Shown here piece after piece: positions 8,545 to 63,888 of a stretch of DNA of 64,000 bases. The notes under the pieces were generated by a model. That model made no database searches. It had not been told where the DNA came from and saw nothing but the letters and a program-made list of their open reading frames with translations. The translations under genes and the position numbers were made by a program. The DNA lies in IMG/VR virus record IMGVR_UViG_3300033146_002768, positions 143,112 through 207,111 of that record; one strand, given 5' to 3'. Position 1 is the stretch's first letter, and every line of letters starts with the position of its first letter.

Positions 8545-8561
8545 TTTTATATTTGTTCTAA
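8545..8561 (-). promoter_or_regulatory. Putative late promoter AGAACAWA-(W)TAWWAA
   Basis: Minus-strand TAGAACAAATATAAAA upstream of 8496. Confidence 0.55.
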
Positions 8562-8582
8562 ACTTTCGTTTATATTATACAC

Positions 8583-9413
8583 TCACTTTATATCGTTTAT
8601 TAATAAACCAAAGTTGTGAAAACATGCTTGACAAATGTTATTATTTTTTTCACAAGGAAATATATTATGTGTAAATAATATTTTTAAAACTAATTTATGT
8701 AAAGGCGAAGAATCAATATCATTTGTATTACCAGCACAACAACGATATATTTTATTTTCAATTAAATCAAGCCTTGGTACTAATATAGATGAATTACAAA
8801 TTCTTTGTGATTTTTTAATTAAATCTTTATTTAAAATATTACTAAAATGTTTTATTTTATCTTTACTATTTGAATCGATATTTAAATTAATAATTTCATA
8901 TAATAATTTAATGTCACTTATAGTTAATATTAAATCTTTATCATTTCCCACATAAAATTTAATAGTAAAATTAATATGATCATTTGTTTTTATGAATGAT
9001 TTTATATATTTTAAATTTTGTTTATGAACTATAATAATATAATCAATCGGAATATCATTATCTTTTATTACATTAATTTTTGTTGGTTCATTTATTTCTG
9101 AAATTACATGGTATGAAATATTATTAATATATGATCTAAATATTTCATGATAATTATTTTCTAAAAATGTACCATTTGTTGCTATCTCACAAGGATGATT
9201 TAATTCATTGAATATTTCTTGTAAATAATCTTTAGATAATAAACCTGGTTCACCTCCAGATAATGAGATTAATATATTAGGATTATATGTTTGAAGTAAA
9301 TTAATATAGTTTTTAACTTTTTCAATTGGAGATGTTTTATTATCAACATTATCGCAATAGTTACATGACCAGTTACATTTATTTGTTATTTTTAATACTA
9401 CTGATTCTATCAT
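8583..9413 (-). CDS. Radical SAM protein (paralog family A)
   Basis: CNWSCNYC, SGGEPG, TNG motifs. Confidence 0.9.
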   Translation of the reverse strand: MIESVVLKITNKCNWSCNYCDNVDNKTSPIEKVKNYINLLQTYNPNILISLSGGEPGLLSKDYLQEIFNELNHPCEIATNGTFLENNYHEIFRSYINNISYHVISEINEPTKINVIKDNDIPIDYIIIVHKQNLKYIKSFIKTNDHINFTIKFYVGNDKDLILTISDIKLLYEIINLNIDSNSKDKIKHFSNILNKDLIKKSQRICNSSILVPRLDLIENKIYRCCAGNTNDIDSSPLHKLVLKILFTHNIFPCEKNNNICQACFHNFGLLINDIK

Positions 9414-10246
9414 ATTTTAGACCTACAATTCCATGCTCCATTGTAACATGAAGAGCATATTATATTAGTTTTATTTTTATGTGTAAACAAATCGTTTTTA
9501 ATAAGTAATCTTAAATTTATTTTGTTAAATGTTATATTATCAATTGTATTAGAAAGTCCAGCACAACATCTAAATATCTTTTCTTTTATTAAATCTAATC
9601 TAGGCATGTATGATATAGTATTGCAATATTCTTGAGCTTTAATAATATTATTATAATTATCTATATTACTAAAGTATTTTATTCTTTCTTTATAATCATC
9701 AATAATATTCATATCACATATACCTTCATAATATAAAGTTGCAATACGTGATTGTGTTAATACATAATTTTGATCTGCTCCAATATAAAATCTCGGACTA
9801 AATTGTATATGACTATTTCTTTGAATGAATGGAATCACTTGGTTTATGTTTCTATTATGGATGACAAAAATATATTGTATTGGGAGATCAGTTTCTATAT
9901 TATCATATATTGTATTGTCATCATTTATCTCAGGAGTTACATGATACCAAAATTCTTTTAGTTTCGATTTAAATAAGTTATGATAATCTTTTTCAAAAAA
10001 TGTACCATTCGTTGCTATCTCACAAGGATTATTAATATGTTTAAATACTTGTTCTAAATACTTCTCAGATAACATACCTGGCTCACCACCTGATAATGAA
10101 ATTGTTATATATGGATTTAATGATTGTAATGAATTAATACATTCTATTAATTTATCAAGTTCTACATTTTGAGAATCAACATTATCACAATATGAACAAT
10201 CCCAATTACATTGATTTGTTACTTTTATTACCATAGTATTAATCAT
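9410..10246 (-). CDS. Radical SAM protein (family A, tandem duplicate of 8583..9413)
   Basis: CNWDCSYC, SGGEPG, EIATNGTF, PRLDLI...RCCAG shared with its neighbour. Start moved to the ATGA overlap at 10246. Confidence 0.9.
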   Translation of the reverse strand: MINTMVIKVTNQCNWDCSYCDNVDSQNVELDKLIECINSLQSLNPYITISLSGGEPGMLSEKYLEQVFKHINNPCEIATNGTFFEKDYHNLFKSKLKEFWYHVTPEINDDNTIYDNIETDLPIQYIFVIHNRNINQVIPFIQRNSHIQFSPRFYIGADQNYVLTQSRIATLYYEGICDMNIIDDYKERIKYFSNIDNYNNIIKAQEYCNTISYMPRLDLIKEKIFRCCAGLSNTIDNITFNKINLRLLIKNDLFTHKNKTNIICSSCYNGAWNCRSKI

Positions 10247-11265
10247 AAATTTTCTTGTCTCCATTCATAAATTTTTGTTAGTGTAATAGGATCAGCATTA
10301 GTAATATCCTTAGAGCTAACATCTTCATAACTATTACAGACTTTACAATGTTCATGATCAGATAAATTTAAATAAGCATTAGAACTATATACTTCATCTA
10401 ATTTCTGAATATTTAAATTTCCTATCTTTGTTTTAAAATATATATCACCAGAGCATCCACACCCTATCATAATACCTGTTGATGAAATAAAATTTTTAGT
10501 AAGAAAGTATTGACACATCTTAGGTCTTTCTTTAACATTAGCAGTTAATTTAAAATTTTCAGACTCTAATACTTCATTACTAATTAATGATCTACGACTA
10601 CAAAAATCATCTCTTGGAAATAACATAGAATTTGTCATTCGACTAATCTGAAATAATAACTTATAAGTTTCAGATGTTATTAGTAATTTATGATGTATTT
10701 TTGTTTTTGTATAAATAGGAATGTTTAAGTTTATATTTATATTATTATCAATTAAATATTTTAAATTATTTTTGAAATTTAAATAAAAGGTTTTTGTACT
10801 TCTGGCAAACCTTTCAAATTCAGAAAAATGTAAACCATAACAACTAATGCCTAACCAACTTATTTTTTTTAATGACAAGAGTTTATCTAAATATTTATTA
10901 TTATCAATTGTTAAATTTGTATAAAAATGATATCCATCAACATTGGGATGATTTTCTAATATATCTAATTTCTCAATAAATGTTTTATCTAAAAAAACTT
11001 CGCCATTCATTGGAGTTAATGAAAAATAAGTAAATCCAAAATCACAACATTGATTCAATATATCTTTAAACATATCAATTGACATACTCATTGACTTCTC
11101 TGTTTTCTTTTCACCTCTTTCTTTTTGATTACAATGGATACAATTTAAATTACATATATTGATAGATTCGATTGCAATATAGTTATAAAACATATTTCCA
11201 TTTTTAGTAAATGATTTATATCTAATATTCTTTTCTATATTAGGAAATTTTGAGAATGTAATCAT
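10243..11265 (-). CDS. Radical SAM protein with Twitch/SPASM-like C-terminus
   Basis: CNLNCIHC, MNGEVFL, C-terminal C...GCGC...IGNL...C..C. Confidence 0.85.
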   Translation of the reverse strand: MITFSKFPNIEKNIRYKSFTKNGNMFYNYIAIESINICNLNCIHCNQKERGEKKTEKSMSMSIDMFKDILNQCCDFGFTYFSLTPMNGEVFLDKTFIEKLDILENHPNVDGYHFYTNLTIDNNKYLDKLLSLKKISWLGISCYGLHFSEFERFARSTKTFYLNFKNNLKYLIDNNININLNIPIYTKTKIHHKLLITSETYKLLFQISRMTNSMLFPRDDFCSRRSLISNEVLESENFKLTANVKERPKMCQYFLTKNFISSTGIMIGCGCSGDIYFKTKIGNLNIQKLDEVYSSNAYLNLSDHEHCKVCNSYEDVSSKDITNADPITLTKIYEWRQENL

Positions 11266-14664: not shown

Positions 14665-15384
14665 TTAATATAAATTTAGAATAGGTTTTTCTTTTTTATA
14701 ATTTCCAAGAGCTTCTTTCCAAGTTTTAGATATATGATGTTTTGTTGTTATTACTTTATTCTTTTTAGAGTTATCTAATATGCCACAAAATTTACATATC
14801 TTTTTTTTCTGTTGTAATATAGTTGATTGATTAATATCTTTCATTCTTTTAATTCCTATATCAAATCCAAATACTCTATCAATTGTTGCAGCAACTCCAC
14901 AAACATAAAATCCATATCTATTAAATCCTAGTCCACAATCAATTTCATTTATACATATTTCTTTATAATTATTTTTGATTTTAGAATATTCATCGTTATC
15001 AACAGGCGCTTCAAAGAAATTAAAAAAAGGATCGGGTCCTAATTTCTTATTAGTATTTTCTAAAATAATATTTTTAGAACGATGTAATATATTTAATCTA
15101 CTTGATTCTTTTACTCCATTTGTTATAACTGTAATATTTGAAGATGTATCGTTTAACATTGTTATGATATATATTAAATCATTTCTCAATGTAGGTTCGC
15201 CACCCAATAAATTTATATTAGTCCATTTAAAATTTAAATCATACGTTTCAATAACAAACTTCTCTAATTGTTTTATTGACATCTCTTCATCACTCGGAGC
15301 TAAATCTTTACTACATGCTCTATTACAATTAAAGCAAGATAAATTACATTTTATTAATAATTCTATTTCAATATTAGTTAACAT
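14665..15384 (-). CDS. Radical SAM protein
   Basis: CNLSCFNCNR, LGGEPTL, ITNG, CGLG....GFYVC, C..C. Confidence 0.88.
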   Translation of the reverse strand: MLTNIEIELLIKCNLSCFNCNRACSKDLAPSDEEMSIKQLEKFVIETYDLNFKWTNINLLGGEPTLRNDLIYIITMLNDTSSNITVITNGVKESSRLNILHRSKNIILENTNKKLGPDPFFNFFEAPVDNDEYSKIKNNYKEICINEIDCGLGFNRYGFYVCGVAATIDRVFGFDIGIKRMKDINQSTILQQKKKICKFCGILDNSKKNKVITTKHHISKTWKEALGNYKKEKPILNLY

Positions 15385-15387
15385 TAT

Positions 15388-16188
15388 TTATACCTTTATA
15401 TTATTAATAAAATGAAAGCAGGTGTTACATACATCACTATTATCAAATTTTATTTTTAACATGTCATTTAAATTATTGATTGTTAAATCTATACTTGCTG
15501 AATTTGTATGACTACAAACACATTTTTTAATTTTACCATAAACTAAATCTATAGAAAAATCATTACTTTTCTCTCGACAAATTTTTCGATATTTTTCTTG
15601 TTTATTCCATATCATTAAAATTTTAAAAAATAAGTTTTTAGAATAAATAGTCGCATTTTTATTTTTTATAATTTTATAAATAGTTTGATAATCATCATGA
15701 TTCAATTCAAATTTAGATTGTTTTAATTTAGAATCATATGGAGATATTTCAAAAGTTATATCTTTATATCTATTTAAAAAATCATCTAACAAATAAATAT
15801 TTTGTTTATGAACTGGAAAATGATAATTTATATTTTTAATATCATATGGATTAAATTCTTCATTTATTTCAGATACTGGATGACACATTATAGTGTTGAT
15901 GTATTCTTTATATTTCTTATAATATCTTTGAATAAATAATCCATTTGTATTAACATGTATATTTTTAGTTTGTAATATTTCAAATATATAATCTAAAATA
16001 GTTTCACTTAATAATCCTATTTCTCCACCAGTTAAAACAACTTTATCTATACTAGATTTATCTCTAATAATTGGTAGGTATTTTTTTAAATATATTAACG
16101 GAGGTTTATTGCGTTTCTTTAAATTTCCTATATCACAATATTTACATTTTCTATTACATTGTTCAGTTAAGAAAAGTGTTAGTTTCAT
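15388..16188 (-). CDS. Radical SAM protein (family A-like)
   Basis: CNRKCKYCD, TGGEIGLL, VNTNGLF. Confidence 0.88.
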   Translation of the reverse strand: MKLTLFLTEQCNRKCKYCDIGNLKKRNKPPLIYLKKYLPIIRDKSSIDKVVLTGGEIGLLSETILDYIFEILQTKNIHVNTNGLFIQRYYKKYKEYINTIMCHPVSEINEEFNPYDIKNINYHFPVHKQNIYLLDDFLNRYKDITFEISPYDSKLKQSKFELNHDDYQTIYKIIKNKNATIYSKNLFFKILMIWNKQEKYRKICREKSNDFSIDLVYGKIKKCVCSHTNSASIDLTINNLNDMLKIKFDNSDVCNTCFHFINNIKV

Positions 16189-16835
16189 AATAAATTTACC
16201 TTTTTCATTTCATCATATATTACATTTGCCCAATAATAATGACCTTCTTCAAGAGGATGATCCCACGGTGCCTTTGGAAATTTTCTTAATCTATAAAACA
16301 TATCACAATTTTTTTTATTAAAATCTAAGTAAAATTTTAAATTAATATTCTTCATAAAAATATTATCATCTTCTATATTATTAGATAAAGCATTAAAGAA
16401 AAAATATTTTATATTTCTAGACTTTAAAAATTCTTGAAATAAAAATAATTTATAACTAAATTCAATATCGGTAGTTTTTTTATCATATATATATTTATAA
16501 AATGATTTAGCTTTTAATTTAATTATTGAATCATTGGTACTTGTTTCATGAGAGTTATGAAGTATTTGTTTAAATTTACCTTTATACATTATTTCAAATC
16601 TATCTGGGTTTGACCAACCAATTATAATAATTAATTTTTTAGGATTATTATTTAAAATCCATTCAGTTGTTGTTCTTATTATTCTATTATTACTACTCCC
16701 AGATTTAGCATCATTCAATATTATTGTATTTATTTTTTTTGATAAAATACCTGGCCAGCAAAATTTTTCTCTATGAAGATTTTCTTCTTTTAATTCTTCA
16801 CCATAAGTAAAACTACAACCATTAACATATATCAT
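16185..16835 (-). CDS. SGNH/GDSL-like esterase or acyltransferase
   Basis: NGCSFTYG block I, SGSSN..I, C-terminal DHP...GH. Confidence 0.7.
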   Translation of the reverse strand: MIYVNGCSFTYGEELKEENLHREKFCWPGILSKKINTIILNDAKSGSSNNRIIRTTTEWILNNNPKKLIIIIGWSNPDRFEIMYKGKFKQILHNSHETSTNDSIIKLKAKSFYKYIYDKKTTDIEFSYKLFLFQEFLKSRNIKYFFFNALSNNIEDDNIFMKNINLKFYLDFNKKNCDMFYRLRKFPKAPWDHPLEEGHYYWANVIYDEMKKVNLL

Positions 16836-16943: not shown

Positions 16944-18401
16944 TTAATCATGATTAAATACCTTTATATTGTGGTCTATTCCAAATTGGATTGCATCCGA
17001 TGAATTATTTACTAATGGTTGTCCTTTAACATTTAAACTAGTATTTAATAACATTGGGCATCCAGTCTTTTTATAAAATTCATTTATTAAATTCCAATAA
17101 CCAGGACTTTCTTTTTTATTAACTGTATGAACTCTTGATGTATTATCAACATGAACTATAGCAGGAAATTTATCAGGATACTTACATGTCATTACATATT
17201 GCATGTAAGGACTTTTAGAAATAATCATATTAAAATATTCAGCGGCATATTCCTCTAATATAGATGGTGAAAAAGGTCGAAACTTTTGACGATGTTTAAT
17301 GTCGTTAATTTTATCTTTTATATTATTCCCACGAGGATCAGCTAATAAAGATCTATTACCAAATGCTCTTGGTCCAAATTCTGCTCGACCATTTGCAACT
17401 CCAACAATATTACCTTTTAACAATTCTTCTAATAAAGATTTAACTGGATAATCACCTTTAATATTATGACCAAGATAAGGTCCTTTCCAATTTAATCTTC
17501 CATTAATTAATGAAGCGGCTCCTATAGAAGACCCCGAATCACCTGGATTAGGCATTATCCAAATGTCATTAAAATATTTAGGTATTAATCTATTAGCTAA
17601 ACAATTTAAAGCAACTCCGCCACAATAAACTAAATTTTTTGAATTAGATATATGTTTAGATTGTTTAATAATATTTTCAATTACTTCTTCTGTAACTTGT
17701 TGAATTGAAGCTGCTATATCTTTTAGATAAGCTCCTTGTAGATAATCATTTGGAATTCCTTTATGACAATTTATTTTAAGTTTAAAAAATTTATCTTTAA
17801 TAAAATCCTTTTTAATTTTATCAGCATAAGATGGATACCCCCAACCAGCCATTCCCATTAAAATATATTCATCTTCATTTGGTTTTAAACCACATCGTTG
17901 AGAAAATGCTGAATATAATATTCCTAATGAATGAGGATAATTAACTTTTTTCAATAATTTTAAATCATCTTTATTTCCTTCCCATATACTTAAAGTAGAC
18001 CATTCACCAATAGAATCTATACAAACAATAACAGCATTATCAAATGGAGAAGTAAAATAACTTGCAGCAGCATGACATTTATGATGATCCAAATATTTAA
18101 TTGGAGTTTTAGGAAAATCAAATTGTTTAAAATAATTATGAAATATATTTTTAGTTTGAAATACTTCATTATATTGACCAGCAAATAACTGTCTTGTTTT
18201 CTTTAAATATGGTTTTTCATAAAAAGCTATAACATCAGGAGTACCAAATCTTAAAGATTCATTTAATATTTCTTGGTTTAAATATAGATCATTTTTTATA
18301 CCAGAATATCGTTCTGAATGAGCAGCAAATAATATTTCATTGTCGTCTATTAATGCAATTGATGCATCATGACTTAGTGCATTTATTCCTAATACTTTCA
18401 T
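16944..18401 (-). CDS. Carbamoyltransferase, CmcH/NodU/TobZ family (copy 2)
   Basis: HDASIA, HHKCHAA, DSIGE, EYILMGMA, YCGGVALNC, PGDSGSSIGA, EFGPRAFGNRS, RQKFRPF, NTSLN. Confidence 0.93.
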   Translation of the reverse strand: MKVLGINALSHDASIALIDDNEILFAAHSERYSGIKNDLYLNQEILNESLRFGTPDVIAFYEKPYLKKTRQLFAGQYNEVFQTKNIFHNYFKQFDFPKTPIKYLDHHKCHAAASYFTSPFDNAVIVCIDSIGEWSTLSIWEGNKDDLKLLKKVNYPHSLGILYSAFSQRCGLKPNEDEYILMGMAGWGYPSYADKIKKDFIKDKFFKLKINCHKGIPNDYLQGAYLKDIAASIQQVTEEVIENIIKQSKHISNSKNLVYCGGVALNCLANRLIPKYFNDIWIMPNPGDSGSSIGAASLINGRLNWKGPYLGHNIKGDYPVKSLLEELLKGNIVGVANGRAEFGPRAFGNRSLLADPRGNNIKDKINDIKHRQKFRPFSPSILEEYAAEYFNMIISKSPYMQYVMTCKYPDKFPAIVHVDNTSRVHTVNKKESPGYWNLINEFYKKTGCPMLLNTSLNVKGQPLVNNSSDAIQFGIDHNIKVFNHD

Positions 18402-19321
18402 AATATATCCATTATTAATTCATGTTCATTATAAACTAATTTATCGAGTATATCTTCTTGAGATAAATTTATGATTTGTTCTTTGTTATCATCAATGTTA
18501 AACAGTTTTAAATAGTAATGGAGTCCATCATTAAACGTTTTATTTTTTGGAGAGTAATATACAGGTTTATTTAAATAACAAAACTCAAATATTAACTTAC
18601 CTATATTCTCCACAAAAATTCCTGTACATACTTCGATCCATCTTTGATATATGTATGAATTACAACCATGAGGTAATAACTTATCATTACTAATATTTAA
18701 ATGAGTTAAGTCACACCAGCTTATAATTTTTTGTTCATTAAAATAACTTTTGAATGTCCCCATATGTGCTTGTTTATTTTCATTTATATCTCTACTAGTA
18801 ACTAAATCTTTATCAATACTAGTTAATGACTTTTCAATATGATTTAATCTATTAATACTAAATTTATGATAATGAATAATAAACTTATCTACATATTGTT
18901 CGAATCGTTTATTGCTTGGGTTACCTAGAAGTGTTATTTGATCACAAAATATATGATTCTTAATATCAAACATATCATCAATATAATTATTATGATATGA
19001 AATATATAATTGAGAAGTATCTAATAATATTAAGTGGTTACAATATATTTTAAAATTTGTCTTCTTTAAAAATCTTAATGTATTTGTTGTTGTGATAATA
19101 GTATCCGATCTCACTTCATCAGTTACTAATCTATCAACAAATTTTTGTGGAGAATCTTGAAGATTCTTTTTAATTTGATTCATCAATGATTTAAAATCTG
19201 TGTTATATAATTTTAATACAAATTCTACATTAATCTGTTTTCTTAAACATAAATATAAATCTATAATTGTAGTATCAGATCCAGATATAGATCCTTTAAA
19301 AAATTCAAATATAGTTATCAT
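18398..19321 (-). CDS. Hypothetical protein, possibly degenerate GT-B glycosyltransferase-like
   Basis: Paralog of 19318..20208 (HGC.S..YQRW....N.F(V/I)ENIGKLIFEF.Y...VYY); fold is inferred only. Confidence 0.4.
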   Translation of the reverse strand: MITIFEFFKGSISGSDTTIIDLYLCLRKQINVEFVLKLYNTDFKSLMNQIKKNLQDSPQKFVDRLVTDEVRSDTIITTTNTLRFLKKTNFKIYCNHLILLDTSQLYISYHNNYIDDMFDIKNHIFCDQITLLGNPSNKRFEQYVDKFIIHYHKFSINRLNHIEKSLTSIDKDLVTSRDINENKQAHMGTFKSYFNEQKIISWCDLTHLNISNDKLLPHGCNSYIYQRWIEVCTGIFVENIGKLIFEFCYLNKPVYYSPKNKTFNDGLHYYLKLFNIDDNKEQIINLSQEDILDKLVYNEHELIMDIL

Positions 19322-23087: not shown

Positions 23088-23681
23088 TTAATTAAATGCT
23101 GAATAGAATGTAGCTAACCTTGCTTCAATATCTTCAACAGTTGTTAGTAATATAACTTCATCTGAGAAAATTTTGTAAATATCATAAGTTGATTTTCTCT
23201 CATCTAATTTATCTCTAAGATCTAAATAAATATCTAAAGCATCAATTATTGCTTGATCCCCTGCATTTATTATTTCAAGATATTTAGCTTCTCTATTTTC
23301 ATCAGTAATTACATAACCAAGATCAATCAATCTATTATTTATAATAGTAAATCCATAAAAATCAAACATTGAAAGACTACCAACTCTGTTTGATGTAAAT
23401 TGTCTAGCTTGATTTCTTGCACCAAGAGCTGCTGCAACAATTGCATCTTCTGCTGCCTGAATTATTAGATCACCTTCGACTAATGGATTGATTAAATTTT
23501 TAGCAAAGAATACTGATTGATTAGCTTCTAAAGAAGTTTCAATTGCGTTATAGCATTCAATTGATGAAATTTCATATAGTCTAACTCCGCCAAATTCAAA
23601 GATAGTTTCTTCATCCCCTTGAAATACAGATACTATTTGGTAATTAACACCAACATCATTAATACCAGCTATAAGTTTCAT
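23088..23681 (-). CDS. Hypothetical protein heading the glycan-enzyme block
   Basis: 197 aa ORF with GGAGG RBS and late-promoter-like motif at 23778. Confidence 0.6.
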   Translation of the reverse strand: MKLIAGINDVGVNYQIVSVFQGDEETIFEFGGVRLYEISSIECYNAIETSLEANQSVFFAKNLINPLVEGDLIIQAAEDAIVAAALGARNQARQFTSNRVGSLSMFDFYGFTIINNRLIDLGYVITDENREAKYLEIINAGDQAIIDALDIYLDLRDKLDERKSTYDIYKIFSDEVILLTTVEDIEARLATFYSAFN

Positions 23682-23765: not shown

Positions 23766-23785
23766 TATTTATAAATATGTTCTAT
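23766..23785 (-). promoter_or_regulatory. Putative late promoter
   Basis: TAGAACATATTTATAAATA upstream of 23681. Confidence 0.6.
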
Positions 23786-25951: not shown

Positions 25952-25958
25952 ATGTTTC

Positions 25959-26519: not shown

Positions 26520-26531
26520 AGTATTATCTCC

Positions 26532-30834: not shown

Positions 30835-31359
30835 TTATTTCACGAATCCTAATACTAATTTTTCATCTGGATTATCATTAGTTTCTAATGCAATAGCCAC
30901 TTTAAATATATGTTCTAATACATTAGTTGCTGATCTTAAACAACCATTACCTGCAGAAATAAGAATATCTTTTTTATAAACTGGTCCGATTGTTCTAACT
31001 GGAACTCTACCAACTAAACCAACAACTGCTCCATCTTCCATTTTTGTATTCATTTCGAAACCAGGTGCTTTAGAAATAATACCAACTACAAATTCAGATG
31101 CATCTTTATCACAAATCTCTGCATCAAATTCACTATCAGATATTTCCATTACTGTCCCAATAGGAAGAGAAATATCTGGATTAACAGAATATCTCTCAGC
31201 AAGGTCACCGTAATATGCTCCAGTTGTATCACCTTGAAATGTAGCACAAAAAATATTATTAAATCTATCAGTTAGACCGCTACCTATATTGTATGCTCCA
31301 TTGCCAACATCAGTAGTAGTTTCATCTTTACCAATTTTTTGTCTTATTTTATAATTCAT
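30835..31359 (-). CDS. Stand-alone tail-spike chaperone-like domain (Peptidase G2/IMC-like)
   Basis: GDLAERY...GTV.....VGIIS..P...VGLVGRVPV...G.V.K.D.L. Confidence 0.6.
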   Translation of the reverse strand: MNYKIRQKIGKDETTTDVGNGAYNIGSGLTDRFNNIFCATFQGDTTGAYYGDLAERYSVNPDISLPIGTVMEISDSEFDAEICDKDASEFVVGIISKAPGFEMNTKMEDGAVVGLVGRVPVRTIGPVYKKDILISAGNGCLRSATNVLEHIFKVAIALETNDNPDEKLVLGFVK

Positions 31360-32267: not shown

Positions 32268-32286
32268 TATTTATAATATGTTCTAT
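32268..32286 (-). promoter_or_regulatory. Putative late promoter
   Basis: TAGAACATATTATAAATA upstream of tail gene 32195. Confidence 0.6.
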
Positions 32287-32326: not shown

Positions 32327-32342
32327 CTATATATATTAATAA
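32327..32342 (+). promoter_or_regulatory. CTATATATATTAATAA motif (putative early/host-RNAP promoter), copy 1
   Basis: Same 16-mer at 49658..49673 and a one-mismatch copy at 49418..49433. Confidence 0.5.
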
Positions 32343-32453: not shown

Positions 32454-32501
32454 AAAATAACTGATTAGTAATTTATAATATGTTCTATATGTTTGGTTAA
32501 C

Positions 32502-33125: not shown

Positions 33126-33244
33126 TAATTTTCCCCTTAATCAAATCATTACATTTATTTAATTATATGTTCTATATTTGGAACATTATTACATATAAAA
33201 GAACAAATCTAAAATATAAACATATAATATATAAGGAGTTTAAA

Positions 33245-49417: not shown

Positions 49418-49433
49418 CTATATATATTATTAA
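49418..49433 (+). promoter_or_regulatory. CTATATATATTA(T)TAA motif, copy 2
   Basis: Upstream of the 49486 mini-ORF. Confidence 0.5.
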
Positions 49434-49657: not shown

Positions 49658-49673
49658 CTATATATATTAATAA
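49658..49673 (+). promoter_or_regulatory. CTATATATATTAATAA motif, copy 3
   Basis: Exact match to 32327..32342. Confidence 0.5.
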
Positions 49674-49820: not shown

Positions 49821-49840
49821 TTAGAACATATTAATAAATA
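49821..49840 (+). promoter_or_regulatory. Putative late promoter
   Basis: TAGAACATATTAATAAATA upstream of the PrsW-like gene. Confidence 0.55.
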
Positions 49841-50699: not shown

Positions 50700-51527
50700 T
50701 TAAGAAATTATATTTAATTTAGTTTTTAATTCATTTATAGATGGTATATAATCTTCAAATCTTAATGTAGTCCAACCTCGGGTTTTTAATAAACGATCTC
50801 TAACCTTATCTTTTTCTTTATCATGCCAGTAACTTCCATCGTATTCTATTGCTATTTTTAAATCAGGTATAGCTATATCTAAACAATAATCAAATATAGG
50901 ATACTCCATTATAGCGGTGGAATATAATTTCTTAACTAAATTAAATAATTCTTTTTGAGGACATGATATAAATGTATTAAGAGATTGACCATAAGATCCT
51001 GATGCACGAAGTTCTTTAAGACGAGACGCTGCTCTTTCTGACCCCATAATTTCAGTATAAGTTTTACCTTTTGTATGATGATCATTTTTAGCATAATATT
51101 CTTTTAATGTTTCACTTGTTCTTTTTCTAACATCAGGATTATGTTGAGGATTATTAATTCCTTCAAATTTAGATGAAACTTGTTTTGATTTCATTACATT
51201 TCTAACCCCATATTTTTTTTGAATGGTATTTCTTGTTTTATTTTCTAATTCTTTGCTAGAATAACCTACACCACCATATTTCTTATTACAAGTTTCAGCT
51301 ATTTGTTTATTACATTTAATTCTTGCATTACTTCTATTGTCAGATTCTTGTTTAGTCATAGTTGGTATATTAGGAAAATCTTTTAATATATCTTCTAATT
51401 TTTTATTATGTATTTTTTTAAGATGTGCCCAATGAAGCATTTTAAATTTTTTAGAGTTTTCACAATATGGACATAAAACATATTCAACATTTTTAATATT
51501 ATGTTTACATGGTCTTCGTTTACTCAT
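50700..51527 (-). mobile_element. Free-standing Zn-finger/DUF559 (Vsr-like) homing-endonuclease-type gene
   Basis: CPYC...HLKKIH finger; LDIAIPDLKIAIEYDGSYWH...RD..L...GW..LRF; located next to the capsid gene. Confidence 0.75.
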
Positions 51528-51575
51528 AGATATAACCTTTTTATAATATGTTCTTATAAAATATTTTGCCTACGG

Positions 51576-53181: not shown

Positions 53182-53200
53182 AATTTATATTATGTTCTAA
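53182..53200 (-). promoter_or_regulatory. Putative late promoter of major capsid gene
   Basis: TAGAACATAATATAAATT. Confidence 0.6.
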
Positions 53201-56007: not shown

Positions 56008-56202
56008 TTATGATTTAGGATTATACATTCCACCTTTTTCAGTCATATAACTTTCATCTTGGTCTGTGTAACCACAAAAACCGCAAGTCCAATTAATGAT
56101 TTCAGGTGTATTTGAAGGTCCGTCATAAAGTTGAGCAACTTCGCCCTTCATTAAATTTAAACCGCCACGACTTTCACATTGTGGACATTGTTTAGTAGCC
56201 AT
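56008..56202 (-). CDS. Small zinc-ribbon protein (paralog 2)
   Basis: CPQC...WTCGFCG; MKGEV and GG.YN shared with paralog 1. Confidence 0.7.
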   Translation of the reverse strand: MATKQCPQCESRGGLNLMKGEVAQLYDGPSNTPEIINWTCGFCGYTDQDESYMTEKGGMYNPKS

Positions 56203-56253
56203 AGTAATACCCTCCTATAAAGATTTATTTATTAATTTGTTCTAGAAAATTGT

Positions 56254-58149
56254 TTAGTAACTGCCCATACCTCCACCCATTGCATCCATTCCATCTTCTT
56301 TCTCAGTACCTAATTCTTTCTCAATTTTCTCACCTACTTCATAATTCTTTAAATCTTCCCAATCAATATTAGATAAGTATTTCTTTTTAGTATATTCTCT
56401 TGGAATACCAACTCTTTCAAGAGTTTCAATAAGGTTAGCAATCTCACTCATGTATCTAGCTTCTCTTTCATATTGAAGAGATTTTGGGCTAGGTAATGCT
56501 ATTAATACATTATCAAGAATTGATAGAGCTTCATCTGGACTTATAATATCATAAACTTTTTGTATAAGTTTATTTATTTGGTGTGATATATATTTTTGAT
56601 GACTAACAATTGTTCTAGCGAATAAAATATTCTCTTCTGTAAGAGCTGCTTTATTAGATAAGTTTTCCTCAATATTAATAAAACTTGGAGGAACTCCTAA
56701 ACTAGCAACAACACTGTCTCTCAAAAATTTTAATTCTTCTACTTTATTTCTAATATCAACATTACCCTCATTGAATGTACTAATATCAACAAATGGTTTT
56801 CCATCTTTCTGAGGAATATAAACATCTTCAAATGTTGTTATCATAGAAGGAATAGTATCAACAGTACCAAAATTATCAAGAGTAATCTTTCTTTTTCTTA
56901 ATTCCTCTTTTAATTTTTCAATCATTTTTCTGGCATCTCTTGGAAGTCCAATTTCAACAGCAATTTTTCTTTTCTCTGTTGAACGTGCTAGACGTTGTAC
57001 TGCTAATGCTGTTTCCATTGCTACAAGACATTTAGCAGAAAATTGTGATGCATCAAATATAGATTCACCATAAGGTTCATACTTAGTAGATGGTCTCATA
57101 AAATGTTGAACTTTATCGGGTGGGACATATCTAATATTCATAGCTTTACTTTGGTCTTGTCCAGAAGCAACCATTTGAGCTACTATATCTTTTAATTCTT
57201 TACTATTAAATTCAGCTACTTGAGGAACTTTTTTAGAAAGATTTTTTAATATTGAATTACAAATATCATTAACCGCTTGATCTTGGACTGATAAATGAGG
57301 AACTGTATTAGCTTTAGGAAATATTAAATATCCAAAACATACTGGATATAATTCACTTTGTAATTTAACAACTCTTGAAGGATCATGAAATAATAATACA
57401 ACATCTGATTTATTTGATTTGCCATCAGTTTCTATTTCTTCATCTGCTTCACTTAATACACTTGATTCTTTTGAATCTGCGAATGATTCATAGTTCATTG
57501 TTATATTCCAAGTACCTTCATCCTTAGTAGCTACTTCAAGAGTTTCTATATATCCTTCTTCTATTATTTTTGCTTGTTCTGCTAAATAAGAAGAACTAGT
57601 TAAAGCTGTTTTTGGAGATGCTATTTCACAAAAATAATCTCCAAACAATAAAGTATTTCTTACTATTAATGATAAATGTTCTTCAAGTTTTAATTTATTA
57701 ACTAATCCTTTTACTTGAACTGTTTTTGCTTCTGTCGGAGTTTCATCTTCTAAAAACTTTTTAGGTTTAATTTCTAATGTCGTTTTTGTAATATCATCTG
57801 GCGAACAAATATTGTCTGTTAAAACATCTAATGCTCTATAACAATAATCAATAGTTCTAATAGTTCCATCATATGATTTATATCGAATCATTCTTTTTTG
57901 TTGACCGAACATAGCTGGTGAAGTATTACCTTGACCAAATATTCCTTTAGATGATGAATCAATATTAAACGAACCGGTGGATTTAGAAATTAAATTTCTT
58001 ACAAGATCAATATAACCATTTCTACCGCTCTGAGATTTATAGTTAGTAATGGATGTTACTGCATCATCTAACTTAGCATCAATGTCAGTAGTTTTAGTAC
58101 CGATTATAGTTTTCTTTAGTGCTTCGAAGTTATCTTTAAGACCAGCCAT
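56254..58149 (-). CDS. Portal protein (T4 gp20-like)
   Basis: R.L.RL.RSTE.R...V..G, ED..IP..DG, LGVP.SF, upstream of the prohead protease. Confidence 0.88.
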   Translation of the reverse strand: MAGLKDNFEALKKTIIGTKTTDIDAKLDDAVTSITNYKSQSGRNGYIDLVRNLISKSTGSFNIDSSSKGIFGQGNTSPAMFGQQKRMIRYKSYDGTIRTIDYCYRALDVLTDNICSPDDITKTTLEIKPKKFLEDETPTEAKTVQVKGLVNKLKLEEHLSLIVRNTLLFGDYFCEIASPKTALTSSSYLAEQAKIIEEGYIETLEVATKDEGTWNITMNYESFADSKESSVLSEADEEIETDGKSNKSDVVLLFHDPSRVVKLQSELYPVCFGYLIFPKANTVPHLSVQDQAVNDICNSILKNLSKKVPQVAEFNSKELKDIVAQMVASGQDQSKAMNIRYVPPDKVQHFMRPSTKYEPYGESIFDASQFSAKCLVAMETALAVQRLARSTEKRKIAVEIGLPRDARKMIEKLKEELRKRKITLDNFGTVDTIPSMITTFEDVYIPQKDGKPFVDISTFNEGNVDIRNKVEELKFLRDSVVASLGVPPSFINIEENLSNKAALTEENILFARTIVSHQKYISHQINKLIQKVYDIISPDEALSILDNVLIALPSPKSLQYEREARYMSEIANLIETLERVGIPREYTKKKYLSNIDWEDLKNYEVGEKIEKELGTEKEDGMDAMGGGMGSY

Positions 58150-59461: not shown

Positions 59462-60370
59462 TTAGACTATAATATCGTCATCATCAAGATCAACTACATC
59501 GTCATCTTCCATAGACTCTGCGAAGATATCAAAAGCTTCTTCTAAAGCTTCTAATTCATCTGCGGTTCCTGGATTTCCAATTGGAGCACCAGATTCTTTG
59601 ATTTCTTTATCAACGTCAAGATCTTCTTCTTTATCATCATCGCCTTCTTTTTCTTCTGCTTTTTCTTCTGGAGTTTCTTTTCCGCCAGCAGTCATATCAT
59701 CTTCCATTTCAAGAAGTTCGTCGAACTCATCTAAGAGATCCATGTCTTCTTTCATAGCTGCTTTGATACCTTTACCAACACCATCAGAACCAGCAGGGAA
59801 TGTAGCAGGTTTTACTGCACCTTCTCCACCTTCATGTTTATCACCATCAATTAAACCAGATGAATCTTTTTCTGGATCTCCAGATGGTTCATGAACTTTT
59901 GTTTTACCGACAGGATCTTGCTCTATGTCTTCTTCAAGAAGTTCGTCTTCTTCCATCTCAGCAATCAATCTTTCAATGACAGCATTTTCAACATCGTCTT
60001 CTAGAAGTTCATCTTCTTCAAGTAGATCACCATCAAGATCAACATCTTCTTGTTTTACAGCATCAGCAATCTTTTTCTTTGCTGCATCTACTTCAATAGT
60101 CTCATCTGGTAATGCCGCTTTATCTTTTCCAACTTGTGGAATAGAAGCATCTTCATTAGTTACTGAAACACCTTTATCCGAATCTTGGTTAAAATAATAT
60201 CTTTCAAGAATTGATGCTGCGTCTTTATGTGTAGGTAGTTCTCCACCACCATCATAACCTAAAATTGGGTCTAAGAATGGACCATTAACATCGACAGTTT
60301 TTGTAGTATCATGACCTCGGTCACCTACTGATTCTTTTAATAGTTCCATATAATTAACTCTTTTACTCAT
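59462..60370 (-). CDS. Very acidic prohead core/scaffold-like protein
   Basis: Asp/Glu-rich with many LLEE/L-x-E sites; lies in the head module. Confidence 0.6.
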   Translation of the reverse strand: MSKRVNYMELLKESVGDRGHDTTKTVDVNGPFLDPILGYDGGGELPTHKDAASILERYYFNQDSDKGVSVTNEDASIPQVGKDKAALPDETIEVDAAKKKIADAVKQEDVDLDGDLLEEDELLEDDVENAVIERLIAEMEEDELLEEDIEQDPVGKTKVHEPSGDPEKDSSGLIDGDKHEGGEGAVKPATFPAGSDGVGKGIKAAMKEDMDLLDEFDELLEMEDDMTAGGKETPEEKAEEKEGDDDKEEDLDVDKEIKESGAPIGNPGTADELEALEEAFDIFAESMEDDDVVDLDDDDIIV

Positions 60371-60472
60371 GACAAATCCTCCTTATAAGGGTATAAATAC
60401 AAATAAATGATTTATTAGTTTAACTTTATTATTTGTTCTTATAAGGAAGGTTACTTAAAGTGAGTTTGTTTC

Positions 60473-62059
60473 TTAAAATGCTTCGCCCATACCTCCAAAG
60501 TCTTTTAGTGGCGGTGGCGGTTTAGTAACTGTAAATTTATTAGATCCAAAATCTATTTTAGTACCTTGAGGAAGTGGTTGTTGTTGTTGTGCTCCATTTG
60601 GGTTTAATGCATCAGGAGAATTTTCATTATTAACTTTTCTACAACTTATAAATCTAAAGTGAGCATAATTAACTTTAAATTCCAAGCTAACATTACTAAC
60701 CCCACTTCTATTTTTACCTACTTTAGCATATACTATAGTATCATCAACCGGATTTCTAGATAATAAAATTACAAAATCTGCATGCTCAACTTTCTTTACT
60801 GATTCTGAAATCTGATCTAAACTTAATTCACCTGCATTTTGAACTCTATATGCACCTCTACCGAGTTGTGTAGGTAACCATACAGGAATATTATATTCAA
60901 CTGCTATTGTTTTCATTGATAAAGTAATATGTCCTAACTCAAGTCTATACATATCATATTTAGTATCACATTTTAATAGATCTAAATAATCTACATATAA
61001 TCCTTTAATAGTACCAGGTCCATATTCAGAAATTGCATCATCAAGAATTCCAACTATATCAAGAGGTGATACACTCATTGCAGGAAAGTATTTCATAATA
61101 ATAGTTGAATTACAAGCTTGCATTCTATCAAGAAGTTTTTGTTTAATATTAACTCCACCTGATATATCTCTTAACACATCATTTTTATCTCTTTGAAATA
61201 AAGGTTGATATGTTCTTAATAAAGATTCTTCAATAGTATTTTCAAGAGTTATGTAAATATAAACATTCTCAACACCATCTTTTTTAGGTTTAGGTTTATC
61301 TTCTGGTGCATCAAATATATTTGGATTAGAGGTTGCGGCATTAATAATTATATTATTTAAAAATGTCGATTTACCAGAACCCGGAGCTCCACCGATAACA
61401 TATAATCTTGATGGTTCTCCACCTCCATTCAATATTTCATTATCAAGTATTTGGTATCCGGTAGGTGTAGTATTTTTTCTTTCATATTTTTTAACAATTA
61501 ATTCTAATACACTTTCATAATCATCTGCTACTAAATCAAGAGAAGCAGCTGCTTCAATAGAAACCCCTCTCTTCTCATTCATCATATTTAGATACATTGT
61601 TTGAATAACATTTTCATAATCCAGTGCTAAATCATCCAAACTATCAAATGACCCATCTCTAAATTGATTTACGAATTTACTTAAATCATCGTAATTTTCA
61701 AATAATGAATTATAAGTCTTTTTTAATCTTAATTGTTTTACTATATCGACAGCAGCACTATCTTTAATTACTTCAGTTCTTTTAAACTCTAAAAAATCTT
61801 GAAGCATATTAAATTTCTTGCTATACATTAAACTATCAATAGCATTTTGGGTAGATTTATCATCCATCTTCATTTGACATATTTTCTTTAAACAATCAAA
61901 TTTAGTCTTAACATTCATAGGAATTTCTAACTGTTCTTTAGATTCATGAAAACCTAGAACAGATAAGACATCTCTATATAAAGCTTTATTCTTTTTTATT
62001 TTAATAGACTTATTTATAACAACACTAAAACAAGAATTTAAAAAAGATTCTGTTATCAA
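60473..62059 (-). CDS. DnaB/gp41-like replicative helicase
   Basis: TPTGY..LD, GGAPGSGKST, YITLE, VDYLDL, PTQL.R, ES..K...AD, K.R.G. Confidence 0.9.
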   Translation of the reverse strand: MITESFLNSCFSVVINKSIKIKKNKALYRDVLSVLGFHESKEQLEIPMNVKTKFDCLKKICQMKMDDKSTQNAIDSLMYSKKFNMLQDFLEFKRTEVIKDSAAVDIVKQLRLKKTYNSLFENYDDLSKFVNQFRDGSFDSLDDLALDYENVIQTMYLNMMNEKRGVSIEAAASLDLVADDYESVLELIVKKYERKNTTPTGYQILDNEILNGGGEPSRLYVIGGAPGSGKSTFLNNIIINAATSNPNIFDAPEDKPKPKKDGVENVYIYITLENTIEESLLRTYQPLFQRDKNDVLRDISGGVNIKQKLLDRMQACNSTIIMKYFPAMSVSPLDIVGILDDAISEYGPGTIKGLYVDYLDLLKCDTKYDMYRLELGHITLSMKTIAVEYNIPVWLPTQLGRGAYRVQNAGELSLDQISESVKKVEHADFVILLSRNPVDDTIVYAKVGKNRSGVSNVSLEFKVNYAHFRFISCRKVNNENSPDALNPNGAQQQQPLPQGTKIDFGSNKFTVTKPPPPLKDFGGMGEAF

Positions 62060-62072
62060 AAACTACCTCCTA

Positions 62073-62444
62073 TCATCTACTAAGGTTGTATGCTATTTTT
62101 CGCTCTAATTTTTTTCTATAATCTTTATCAATACTTTGTTTAATTTCTTCACTTGATTTTTTAAATGGGACATCATCTTCTGGAAACCAACAAGACCATT
62201 CCATAAATATTTGAGAGTTAATATTCCTCTCTACTTCTTCATTTATTCTTTTACCAACAACATTTTCAATCCAATCAAGTTTTCCGTCTCCATAACATTT
62301 TTGACATGATATATGAGATGAAAAAAATCTTTGATACTTTTTATCTTTCTTAATCTCTATTTGACCAGTACCTTTACACACTTTACATTCTGATTCGCCT
62401 GTTTTTAGTTCATCATATGCTTTATAATCTTTTTTAATATCCAT
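62073..62444 (-). CDS. Protein with DnaJ-type CxxCxGxG zinc-finger pair
   Basis: CKVCKGTG and CQKCYGDG. Confidence 0.7.
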   Translation of the reverse strand: MDIKKDYKAYDELKTGESECKVCKGTGQIEIKKDKKYQRFFSSHISCQKCYGDGKLDWIENVVGKRINEEVERNINSQIFMEWSCWFPEDDVPFKKSSEEIKQSIDKDYRKKLERKIAYNLSR

Positions 62445-62446
62445 AA

Positions 62447-63820
62447 CTACACCGTTAACAATCTAGTTGTATGATCTAAATCAGAAAACTCATCTTTAGC
62501 TAAATGTTTATTAACAATATACTTACAATAATCTTCATCAAGATCAATTAACATTTTAATTGAATTAACTAATGAGTGAGTTTTGGCTTTTTGTTTTCTA
62601 GTTATTTTTCCTTGATTAACATTTTGAGTTACTAAACCACATTGTTTATTAAACTCTTCTAAGTCACCTGATTGATATATTGGGAATACTTCACTTGCTT
62701 TTTGTCTTAGTAATAATTGAGTATCAGCATATGTTCTTAACACCAAACACGCTGCATATAATCTAAAATCATCTGGAAATGTTCCTGTAACTTTATTATA
62801 AATTTCAAAAGTTTTAAGTCTTTTTAAATTATAACGATCCGACATATTATTTATTCTATCTTCAATAATATCAGTAACACTTGTTGTAGTATTAGGATGA
62901 AATCTTTTATCAAGACATGCTGTTCGTAAATCAACTTTTCTTATAATTTTATCATTATCTAATATATGTATTGTTCTACCTCTCATTAGACCTTTAAACA
63001 CACCAGAACTATCATAACTAATTCTTAATTCAACATCGTGAGTTTCTTTAACAACCTTTTGGAATATCTCATAAAAGAAAATGTCTCTAAAATTAGCTCC
63101 ACCTAATATATGAAAGTCTAATTCTTTTCGACCAGCTGCAATAGCTTTTTTAAGGACAGGAATCAAAGGAAGAACATAAATTATACAAGGTATAGCAGTA
63201 TCAGAACTCATATTAGCAACTATACCGCCAGTACCAAAATGAGTAAATGCATCTAATTCTGTATAGATATCCCACAGTTTAGGAGTTCTAAAATGATGAA
63301 TATAAATCACTTTATCTCTTACCTCTTTAGGTAACTGTCTTGCCATATTATAAGTTCGTTCATTACCATAAAAAATATCATCAAAGTTTTTAAATAATTT
63401 ACAACCAGGACCAGGAGGCAAATCTAATATAAATGCTTTATCAATACAATCATGTTCTTCTCTTAAAAATTGATGATATAATTGAATTAAGTTTTCAGTT
63501 TCATGTTCATCTATTCTTCCTATAGATGCTTGGAATCCGCCGCTATCAACTATAAAATTACAATTATCAAATATTCCTAATGATCTGCAATCTCTAAATA
63601 GAGCTGCTTCCTTTGCAACATATTTATCATATTTCTTTTTACCAGTAAAATTTTGACCAAATGAATGTAGGAAACCATGACATGTTTCGGATAGAAAATT
63701 CGACATAATATCTGGTGTGAAATTATCATCCCAATTATCCTGCATATTTTTAATCGAGAAATTTTTCACATAGGTTGCCATAGTCTCAAAACCGGCTAAC
63801 ACATAATTACTATCTGACAT
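62447..63820 (-). CDS. tRNA-guanine transglycosylase-like (DpdA-like) protein
   Basis: VDSGGFQ TGT signature, LDLPP, GGI, HILG, YDSS. Confidence 0.7.
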   Translation of the reverse strand: MSDSNYVLAGFETMATYVKNFSIKNMQDNWDDNFTPDIMSNFLSETCHGFLHSFGQNFTGKKKYDKYVAKEAALFRDCRSLGIFDNCNFIVDSGGFQASIGRIDEHETENLIQLYHQFLREEHDCIDKAFILDLPPGPGCKLFKNFDDIFYGNERTYNMARQLPKEVRDKVIYIHHFRTPKLWDIYTELDAFTHFGTGGIVANMSSDTAIPCIIYVLPLIPVLKKAIAAGRKELDFHILGGANFRDIFFYEIFQKVVKETHDVELRISYDSSGVFKGLMRGRTIHILDNDKIIRKVDLRTACLDKRFHPNTTTSVTDIIEDRINNMSDRYNLKRLKTFEIYNKVTGTFPDDFRLYAACLVLRTYADTQLLLRQKASEVFPIYQSGDLEEFNKQCGLVTQNVNQGKITRKQKAKTHSLVNSIKMLIDLDEDYCKYIVNKHLAKDEFSDLDHTTRLLTV

Positions 63821-63888
63821 AGTTTCACCTTTCGCTTATATTTAATATTTATAATATGTTACAATTGTTCATTATATTTTCTATTTCA

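What the first reader, a model, noticed from the sequence alone, without database searches (positions are those of the whole stretch)
8545..63860. Recurrent extended late-promoter motif AGAACAWA(W)TAWWAA
Seen: AGAACA followed 2-4 nt later by an AT-rich, often TATAAA-like box. It lies in intergenic DNA and faces the downstream gene, except the 32481 copy, which faces the 32360 hairpin. TGTTCT/AGAACA positions: 8554, 23778, 32279, 32481, 33168, 49823(+), 51549, 53193 (capsid), 56238, 60434, with a variant near 63846-63861. A further copy lies inside the IMC-like gene at 30911, just upstream of the first SPASM rSAM. Established: T4 late promoters are TATAAATA read by gp55. Inference: an extended late promoter for a phage sigma factor, which would make the modification island late-expressed (virion maturation, not DNA replication).
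Basis: partly seen in the sequence, partly recalled or inferred. Interest (0 to 1): 0.6.

Follow-up and report, generated by a model that had tools for sequence, protein, structure and literature searches.

The report
Jumbo-phage late promoter motif RGAACA-N8-AA
The repeated AGAACA...AAA box is a real, gene-facing promoter signal shared by a whole clade of uncultivated jumbo phages, and it is most likely read by the phage's own RNA polymerase, as in Bacillus phage AR9, not by a T4-style late sigma factor on the host enzyme.

Summary
All twelve listed copies are present, and I found two more (18468-18482 minus, 33200-33214 plus). The extended motif occurs 10 times in the window against 0.2 expected. 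In the whole 207-kb record, 22 intergenic copies occur against 0.3 expected, and 27 of 28 intergenic copies face the next gene. They precede the capsid, portal operon, terminase, sheath, tail and head genes.

The motif recurs upstream of the capsid gene in 16 of 23 distinct relatives (65-95% capsid identity) while the flanks diverge. The TATAAA-like half is not conserved there. What is conserved is R-GAACA-W-A-N4/5-AA.

The T4/gp55 interpretation is not supported:
- No gp55 or sigma region 2 was found, here or in complete relatives.
- The phage and its relatives encode two sets of RNA polymerase beta/beta' genes.
- A second motif, CTATATATATTA (13 copies, all intergenic), marks the other transcription units.

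The two motifs resemble AR9's early (AAATATATATTAT) and late (AACA-6N-TA/G) promoters. Ribosome-binding sites often abut the A-run, so transcription probably starts there.

No transcript data exist. The start site, the timing and the recognising factor are therefore inferred. This is a new variant of a known kind, of moderate interest.

The parts
8545..8559 (-). Late-type motif AGAACAAATATAAAA, 63 nt before the 96-aa gene 8206-8496; the next gene downstream, 7155-8168, is peptidase-like
18468..18482 (-).
23768..23783 (-). Late-type motif of the N5 spacing class, 102 nt before gene 23088-23681
30901..30916 (-). Late-type motif inside gene 30835-31359, 92 nt before the radical SAM/SPASM gene 29709-30824
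32270..32284 (-). Late-type motif at the head of the minus-strand modification island, 101 nt before the start my gene caller chose for gene 31371-32195
32472..32486 (-). Late-type motif 200 nt upstream of the previous copy; it reads into the structured non-coding stretch 32340-32472 and then the same operon
33158..33173 (-). Late-type motif 48 nt before gene 32502-33125; stands back to back with the plus-strand copy in a 119-nt divergent gap
33200..33214 (+).
49823..49838 (+). Late-type motif 35 nt before gene 49858-50640
51540..51554 (-). Late-type motif 27 nt before the homing-endonuclease-like gene 50700-51527; the ribosome-binding site follows the A-run directly
53184..53198 (-). Late-type motif 69 nt before the major capsid gene 51678-53129 (Gp23 family); kept at the same place in 16 of 23 distinct relatives
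56228..56243 (-). Late-type motif 41 nt before small gene 56008-56202, just downstream of the portal gene
60425..60439 (-). Late-type motif 69 nt before gene 59462-60370, heading the operon that ends with the portal gene 56254-58149
63847..63862 (-). Variant that keeps AACA but has GT in place of AG, about 27 nt before gene 62447-63820; the DnaB-like helicase 60473-62059 lies downstream
32327..32338 (+). Early-type motif CTATATATATTA pointing into the plus-strand block (phosphoesterase, ligase, NAD genes)
49418..49429 (+). Early-type motif CTATATATATTA in the 550-nt non-coding stretch before gene 49858-50640
49658..49669 (+). Early-type motif CTATATATATTA, the second copy in the same stretch

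Best explanation
The motif is the promoter of the non-early (middle plus late) gene class of a jumbo phage that transcribes itself with its own multisubunit RNA polymerases. Its conserved form is R-GAACA-W-A-N4/5-AA. The GAACA block occupies the position of a -10 element, about -12 to -8. The conserved A pair is the initiation site, the geometry of the AR9 late promoter A(-11)ACA-6N-TA/G(+1).

A second motif, (w)C-TATATATATTA, marks the early units. It probably serves a virion-borne polymerase. The early units include the replication genes and one beta'/beta pair, and that pair would then read the RGAACA promoters.

Shown: the motif, its enrichment, its orientation, its gene set, its conservation across the clade, the two polymerase gene sets, and the absence of gp55 and sigma region 2. 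Inferred: the start site, the timing, which polymerase reads which motif, and the recognising subunit, which remains unidentified.
For: 1. Enrichment and orientation.
2. Downstream genes are the capsid, portal operon, large terminase, tail-tube-like protein, a virion protein followed by the sheath, a tail protein and a head protein. Only one copy, inside a gene, lies in the 15.6-63.3 kb replication block.
3. Clade-wide footprint. 16 of 23 distinct relatives keep the motif before the capsid gene while the flanks diverge. Logos anchored only on GAACA in three independent sets all show R-1, A6, A12 and A13. T7, T8 and A9 are conserved only in this genome. De novo 6-mer enrichment finds the motif again in the complete 277-kb relative. 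Orthologous copies stand before the terminase gene and its upstream neighbour in both genomes.
4. Polymerases. There are two Rpb2_6 beta genes (1366 and 1028 aa), one intact beta' (906 aa) and pieces of a second. Both complete relatives carry two beta genes of the same two sizes.
5. The second motif has 13 exact 12-mers, all intergenic, against 0.09 expected, and is kept in relatives. 14 of 16 sides of real divergent gaps carry one motif or the other, usually late on one side and early on the other.
6. Start site. In 88 oriented copies the Shine-Dalgarno core never starts before position 12 (counting the G of GAACA as 0). In 13 copies it starts at 12-20, upstream of the +1 that a T4-type reading predicts at position 21.
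7. AR9 precedent: early AAATATATATTAT-6N-G and late AACA-6N-TA/G, read by the virion and non-virion polymerases (PMC5312081, PMC7598289; the AR9 sequences were checked).
Against: No transcript 5' ends or expression timing exist for this phage or any relative, and no sequencing run was listed.

The polymerase subunits are unsplit and far closer to bacterial RpoB (1e-86) than to the AR9 enzyme (2e-22). No homologue of the AR9 specificity subunit gp226 was found. The AR9 parallel therefore rests on motif shape alone, and AACA is only four bases.

A bacterial-like core could still use a sigma too divergent to detect. A cultured phage with similar polymerase genes, YerA41, packages a sigma factor (PMC7354516).

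The record is about 66% complete. Which polymerase set is virion-borne is unknown. In the complete relative the first set lies behind both an early and a late motif.
Confidence: 0.6

Rival explanations
1. T4-type late promoter. The TATAAA-like box is the -10 element, read by a gp55-like phage sigma on the host RNA polymerase, and AGAACA is an upstream extension.
For: The capsid, terminase and sheath are T4-like (Gp23 family 3.9e-33; T4-type terminase). In this genome many copies read TATAAAT, close to T4's TATAAATA.
Against: The gp55 profiles (phrog_234, phrog_12791) and T4 gp55 by phmmer find nothing here, and phrog_234 finds nothing in 7 relatives, two of them complete. No Sigma70_r2 was found, and phmmer finds no gp45. 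The TATAAA bases are not conserved in relatives, which show forms such as AGAACATAATCCAAAA and AGAACAAACAACAAAT. In 13 of 88 copies the ribosome-binding site would lie upstream of the predicted start. The phage has its own polymerases.
Confidence: 0.1
2. The phage's own sigma-like protein (genome 125025-125642, 205 aa, outside the window) reads AGAACA as a duplex, -35-like element through its region 4 helix-turn-helix. It would direct the host or a phage core polymerase to these sites.
For: The protein matches Sigma70_r4 at 1.8e-9. A profile of its family matches region 4 of SigA at 4e-25. The AlphaFold model (pLDDT 81) matches primary sigma factors over about 180-195 columns, the sigma3-sigma4 part. 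SigA-type region 4 reads TTGACA, which shares ACA with AGAACA (my own knowledge). An early-type motif lies about 400 nt upstream of its operon.
Against: It is absent from all 16 relatives searched, including both complete genomes and the closest relative, although they keep the motif. The same search finds it in the phage's own genome at 7.6e-71. It has no detectable region 2. No second conserved block lies about 17 bp downstream of AGAACA, and in copies 26-28 nt from the start codon there is no room for one.
Confidence: 0.1
3. The element acts after or beside initiation. It would be an RNA-level signal in 5' leaders (a processing site or translational operator), or the operator of a DNA-binding regulator, and not the polymerase recognition site itself.
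For: It always lies in leaders or in the 3' ends of upstream genes in the sense orientation. An RNA signal would do the same.
Against: It stands at the heads of divergent units, where no upstream transcript can arrive. One example is the back-to-back pair at 33158-33214. It is compact and has no dyad symmetry. The other gaps carry a second, equally oriented motif, as expected of two promoter classes.
Confidence: 0.07

Closest known systems
Late promoters of Bacillus phage AR9/PBS2, A(-11)ACA-6N-TA/G(+1), read by the non-virion RNA polymerase with gp226 (PMC5312081, PMC5449584, PMC9209446)
   Same: Both are compact single-block promoters with an AACA core and no -35 element. Six bases after the core comes the base before the start; the start itself is a purine in AR9 and, here, the conserved A12 taken as the start. 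Both are paired with an AT-rich, near-invariant early motif of almost the same sequence (AAATATATATTAT in AR9, CTATATATATTA here). Both phages carry two beta/beta' polymerase gene sets, and in both some genes have early and late motifs together. The capsid's best GenBank match is phiR1-37, an AR9 relative, at 26%.
   Different: Here the core extends to R-G-AACA with a further conserved A6, and the base before the start is A, not T. The polymerase subunits are unsplit and bacterial-like. No gp226 homologue was found. Uracil DNA and template-strand recognition are untested. No start site has been mapped.
T4 late promoter TATAAATA, read by gp55 with gp33 and the gp45 clamp on host RNA polymerase
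   Same: It is a single AT-rich block with no -35 element in front of virion genes, and this genome's copies often contain TATAAAT. The structural genes are T4-like.
   Different: The TATAAA bases are not conserved across the clade. No gp55 was found, and phmmer finds no gp45. The phage has its own polymerases. Ribosome-binding sites sit too close for a start 6-7 nt after the box.
Multisubunit-RNAP-encoding Caudovirales, mReC (Weinheimer and Aylward 2020, PMC7481178)
   Same: The phage has unsplit beta and beta' genes, a Gp23-family capsid and a T4-type terminase. It is a jumbo-sized, uncultivated genome from IMG/VR.
   Different: That paper does not contain the words promoter or sigma. Placement of this phage in their tree was not tested.
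phiKZ late promoters (TATG at the start site) and AT-rich early promoters of the virion polymerase (PMC7598289)
   Same: The scheme is the same: two polymerases, with an invariant AT-rich early motif.
   Different: The phiKZ late signal is only TATG overlapping the start. The review states that middle and late promoters of these phages cannot be predicted from sequence, whereas here the late motif is easily predicted.

Membership tests
T4-type late promoter system | A conserved TATAAATA box as the only promoter element | tested here: not met
   The TATA positions (7-10 after the G) are conserved only in this genome. In the complete relative and 22 other loci they sit at background level.
T4-type late promoter system | A gp55 late sigma encoded by the phage | tested here: not met
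   phrog_234, phrog_12791 and T4 gp55 by phmmer give no match here. phrog_234 also gives none in 7 relatives, two of them complete. Caveat: this record is about 66% complete.
T4-type late promoter system | Start site 6-7 nt downstream of the box | tested here: inconclusive
   No transcript data. Indirectly disfavoured: in 13 of 88 copies the Shine-Dalgarno core lies upstream of that position.
AR9-type late promoter (non-virion RNAP) | AACA followed by six bases, then the base before the start and a purine start | tested here: met
   As a sequence pattern: AACA at positions 1-4, and A at position 12 in 34 of 37 copies and at position 13 in 32 of 37. That position 12 is the actual start is not shown.
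AR9-type late promoter (non-virion RNAP) | Two phage-encoded multisubunit RNA polymerases | tested here: met
   Two beta genes, one beta' and fragments of a second are present. Both complete relatives have two beta genes. The subunits are unsplit, unlike those of AR9.
AR9-type late promoter (non-virion RNAP) | A gp226/gp68-family specificity subunit | tested here: not met
   phrog_25005 and AR9 gp226 by phmmer give no significant match. The control genomes gave no match either, and this family is known to be invisible to sequence searches, so the test is weak.
AR9-type late promoter (non-virion RNAP) | Uracil DNA and template-strand recognition | not testable with these tools
   This needs nucleoside analysis and in vitro transcription.
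Sigma70-type bipartite promoter | Two conserved blocks about 17 bp apart | tested here: not met
   There is no conservation from position 15 to 34 after the motif or upstream of it.
mReC phage clade | Beta and beta' genes together with a Gp23-family capsid and a T4-type terminase | tested here: met
   PF00562, PF00623, PF04998, PF07068 and PF03237 all match. Phylogenetic placement was not done.

The most novel reading that the evidence does not exclude
A deep-branching clade of uncultivated jumbo phages with two bacterial-like, unsplit RNA polymerases uses the same two-promoter grammar as the split-polymerase, uracil-DNA phage AR9: an AT-rich TATATATATTA early box and an AACA-centred late box with the start about 11 nt downstream of its first A. 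This would mean that the grammar, and possibly template-strand recognition by an undetected sigma-like subunit, predates the splitting of the polymerase genes and is ancestral to polymerase-encoding jumbo phages.
Probability: 0.3. Interest if true: 0.75.

Novelty: new variant of a known kind. Interest (0 to 1): 0.55.

Why it matters
A 2020 review states that middle and late promoters of polymerase-encoding jumbo phages cannot be predicted from sequence (PMC7598289). Here both promoter classes can be read directly from the DNA and are conserved across many uncultivated genomes. That gives a ready temporal map of genes for a phage clade with no cultured member. It also supplies defined templates for testing how a deeply branching viral RNA polymerase finds promoters without a recognisable sigma factor. 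Finally, it allows a check of whether the AR9 mechanism is general. It corrects the T4-based reading of the locus as well.

Tried and rejected
- Bare AGAACA is not enriched: 55 copies against 48 expected.
- An iterated position-weight matrix drifted into AT-rich sequence and was dropped.
- Megablast of the capsid region against GenBank phages gave no match.
- No public sequencing run was listed for the capsid region, so no reads could be laid.
- gp55, AR9 gp226 and Sigma70_r2 searches were blank. A phmmer search with T4 gp45 was also blank.
- A weak gp55/gp226 hit on window ORF 16185-16835 was not backed by PHROGs.
- The sigma3-sigma4-like protein was considered as the specificity factor and rejected, because all 16 relatives lack it.
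- Neighbours of the polymerase genes were screened for a hidden factor. They turned out to be ThiF-like, JAB-like, a polynucleotide kinase-like protein and a FolE2-like GTP cyclohydrolase. No candidate emerged.
- One literature search was mis-specified and returned nothing useful. No paper combines AGAACA, late promoter and phage.
- There are no tRNA genes and no Rfam matches in the window.
- Divergent-gap counts for the complete relative are unreliable, because my simple ORF caller makes spurious small genes there.

Full report
**Setting**

The window is the last 64 kb (143112-207111) of a 207,111-bp IMG/VR virus record. The record has 29% G+C, is linear, and CheckV estimates it at 66% complete. 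My own ORF caller gives 260 genes covering 94% of the record. Gene numbers g001-g260 refer to that call.

The hexamer alone is not enriched: 55 copies against 48 expected. The extended motif is:
- AGAACAWAWWWWWAAW gives 10 hits in the window against 0.21 expected.
- RGAACAWANNNNAAA gives 8 hits against 0.94 expected.
- In the whole record, RGAACAWA-N4-AAA occurs 28 times, 22 of them in the 13.4 kb of intergenic DNA. A second-order Markov model of intergenic composition expects 0.30 there. The one-base-longer spacing class occurs 20 times, 12 intergenic, against 0.28 expected.

A search with no prior assumption also finds the motif. Among all 6-mers in upstream gaps oriented with the downstream gene, AGAACA ranks highest once Shine-Dalgarno words and TA repeats are set aside: 26 copies in 25 of 91 gaps against 6 expected.

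Of 28 intergenic copies, 27 point at the adjacent gene. Most of the 14 copies inside genes lie in the 3' end of a co-oriented gene, within about 100 nt of the next start. So is an unlisted copy at 18468-18482. A second unlisted copy lies at 33200-33214 on the plus strand.

The flanks of the copies are not alike, so this is not a dispersed repeat.

**What the motif looks like**

I anchored only on GAACA in oriented gaps and counted the G as position 0. The conserved positions are R at -1, A at 6, and A at 12 and 13 (34 and 32 of 37 copies). T, T and A at positions 7-9 are weaker.

**Which genes follow it**

- In the window: the Gp23-family capsid gene, the operon ending in the portal gene, a peptidase-like gene, and the radical SAM island.
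- Elsewhere in the record: the large terminase, a tail-tube-like protein, a virion protein followed by the sheath, a tail protein and a head protein.
- The stretch from 15.6 to 63.3 kb has a single copy, inside a gene. It holds topoisomerase, helicase and SbcCD-like genes and one beta'/beta pair.

**Relatives**

The capsid protein finds 27 IMG/VR loci at 65-95% identity. In 16 of 23 distinct relatives an RGAACA motif (TGAACA in one) stands before the capsid gene, although the surrounding sequence has diverged completely. In the rest the capsid gene mostly follows another gene directly.

The copies in relatives often lack any TATAAA. Examples are AGAACATAATCCAAAA, AGAACAAACAACAAAT and AGAACATAATTGAAAG.

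Anchored logos from this genome, from a complete 277-kb relative (G005, 37% G+C, fetched whole) and from 22 further loci agree on R-1, GAACA, A6, A12 and A13. Positions 7-10 are conserved only in this genome. In G005 the motif is again found de novo. It also stands before the orthologues of the terminase gene and of its upstream neighbour.

**Who reads it?**

I found none.
- T4 gp55 by phmmer, the gp55 profiles phrog_234 and phrog_12791, and Sigma70_r2 are all blank in this record.
- phrog_234 is blank in 7 relatives and Sigma70_r2 in 10, including both complete genomes.

Instead the record encodes its own RNA polymerase genes:
- Two beta genes of 1366 and 1028 aa.
- An intact beta' of 906 aa next to the shorter beta.
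- Pieces of a second beta' at the start of the record, separated by HNH endonuclease genes. The orthologue in G005 is one gene of 1001 aa.
- Both complete relatives carry two beta genes of the same two sizes.

These subunits are unsplit and much closer to bacterial RpoB (1e-86, 2e-72) than to the AR9 enzyme (2e-22). With the Gp23 capsid and the T4-type terminase, this fits the multisubunit-RNAP-encoding Caudovirales of Weinheimer and Aylward (PMC7481178). That paper does not mention promoters or sigma factors.

**A second motif**

The gaps without RGAACA share (w)C-TATATATATTA. There are 13 exact 12-mers, all intergenic, against 0.09 expected. No conserved -35 block accompanies them. The motif is kept in relatives, and in G005 it extends to TATATATATTAATTAMT.

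In 14 of 16 sides of real divergent gaps one of the two motifs is present. The usual arrangement is late on one side and early on the other. In the window the early-type copies lie at 32327, 49418 and 49658, all on the plus strand. They point into the block with the phosphoesterase, NAD-dependent ligase and NAD-salvage genes. That block also has a late-type copy at 33200.

**Comparison with AR9**

In Bacillus phage AR9, early promoters read AAATATATATTAT-6N-G and late promoters A(-11)ACA-6N-TA/G(+1). Genes expressed throughout infection carry both (PMC5312081, PMC7598289). I confirmed the AR9 sequences in the record.

The present pair of motifs matches both in sequence and in layout. If the first A of AACA is -11, the conserved A12 is +1.

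**Where does transcription start?**

There are no transcript data. One sequence argument bears on it. In 88 oriented copies from this genome, G005 and the other loci, the Shine-Dalgarno core never begins before position 12. In 13 copies it begins at 12-20, for example AGAACAAATAAAAAAGGGAG before the terminase gene. A T4-type reading puts +1 at position 21, which would leave these ribosome-binding sites out of the mRNA. A start in the A-run keeps them in.

**The sigma-like gene**

A search for Sigma70 region 4 found one gene at genome 125025-125642, outside the window. A profile of its family matches region 4 of SigA at 4e-25. Its AlphaFold model (pLDDT 81) matches primary sigma factors over the sigma3-sigma4 part. 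No region 2 is detectable.

It is absent from all 16 relatives searched, although the same search finds it in the phage's own genome. It therefore cannot explain a motif shared by the clade.

AR9 gp226 is itself a sigma-like protein that no sequence search recognises (PMC9209446). An undetected factor of that kind remains likely. My screen of the polymerase neighbours found only metabolic proteins.

**Verdict**

'Promoter of a non-early class' is well supported by position, orientation, gene content and conservation. 'T4-like, gp55' is not supported. The best reading is a phage-polymerase promoter with AR9-like geometry.

The timing, the start site and the reader of the motif are inferences.

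The claim that the modification island serves virion maturation is not settled. The island has five copies, but the same class also precedes a helicase operon and the ligase/NAD block.

Noticed in passing
window 32327-32338, 49418-49429, 49658-49669 (all +); 10 further exact 12-mer copies in the record outside the window (13 in all, every one intergenic): A second, near-invariant motif (w)C-TATATATATTA, all 13 exact 12-mers intergenic. It is conserved in relatives and resembles the AR9 early promoter. It probably marks the early transcription units.
   Followed up: yes
window 32340-32472: A 300-nt non-coding gap holds a strong hairpin (stems GGGATAATG / CATTATCCC; folding z about -4 on both strands). 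It lies between an early-type motif reading rightwards and a late-type motif reading leftwards. No T-run follows, so it is not a standard terminator. It may be a small RNA or an attenuator.
   Followed up: partly
genome 125025-125642 (+), outside the window (L010:5025-5642): A 205-aa protein with a sigma3-sigma4 fold and no region 2. It is present in this phage but in none of 16 relatives. Its role is unknown.
   Followed up: yes
genome 1-5353 (L004), outside the window: The second beta' gene is broken into pieces (324 aa and 237 aa) by genes with HNH endonuclease domains, and it is cut by the start of the record. The orthologue in the complete relative is a single 1001-aa gene.
   Followed up: partly
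window 14665-16188, 16944-18401, 23809-30824, 62447-63820; genome 51824-52669: The modification island holds at least five radical SAM proteins (two of them QueE-like, one with a SPASM domain) and a Nol-like carbamoyltransferase. A weak queuine tRNA-ribosyltransferase-like match and a FolE2-like GTP cyclohydrolase lie elsewhere in the record. Together they hint at a 7-deazaguanine-type DNA modification. Cultured phages with similar polymerase genes (YerA41, Carin-5) instead have hypermodified thymidine.
   Followed up: partly
window 36776-38611, 44209-46382: An NAD-dependent DNA ligase lies near nicotinamide phosphoribosyltransferase-like and NAD synthetase-like genes. This could be an NAD-replenishing set.
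   Followed up: no
genome 40185-41309 and 43588-44463 (L006): JAB-like and ThiF-like (E1-like) genes lie a few kb upstream of the beta'/beta pair, suggesting a ubiquitin-like conjugation pair.
   Followed up: no
genome 128-138 kb (L010): A cluster of very small genes in alternating orientation. Each has an early-type motif followed by a shared leader (GTAATAGTAAAGGATTATTAATTT...), and many stand back to back with late-type motifs.
   Followed up: no
window 50700-51527: A homing-endonuclease-like gene sits directly downstream of the capsid gene and has its own late-type motif 27 nt upstream.
   Followed up: no
relative G014 (312-kb complete record reached through L035): Seventeen ORFs, mostly of about 180-290 aa, match the Sigma70 region 4 helix-turn-helix. 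No other relative shows such an expansion.
   Followed up: no
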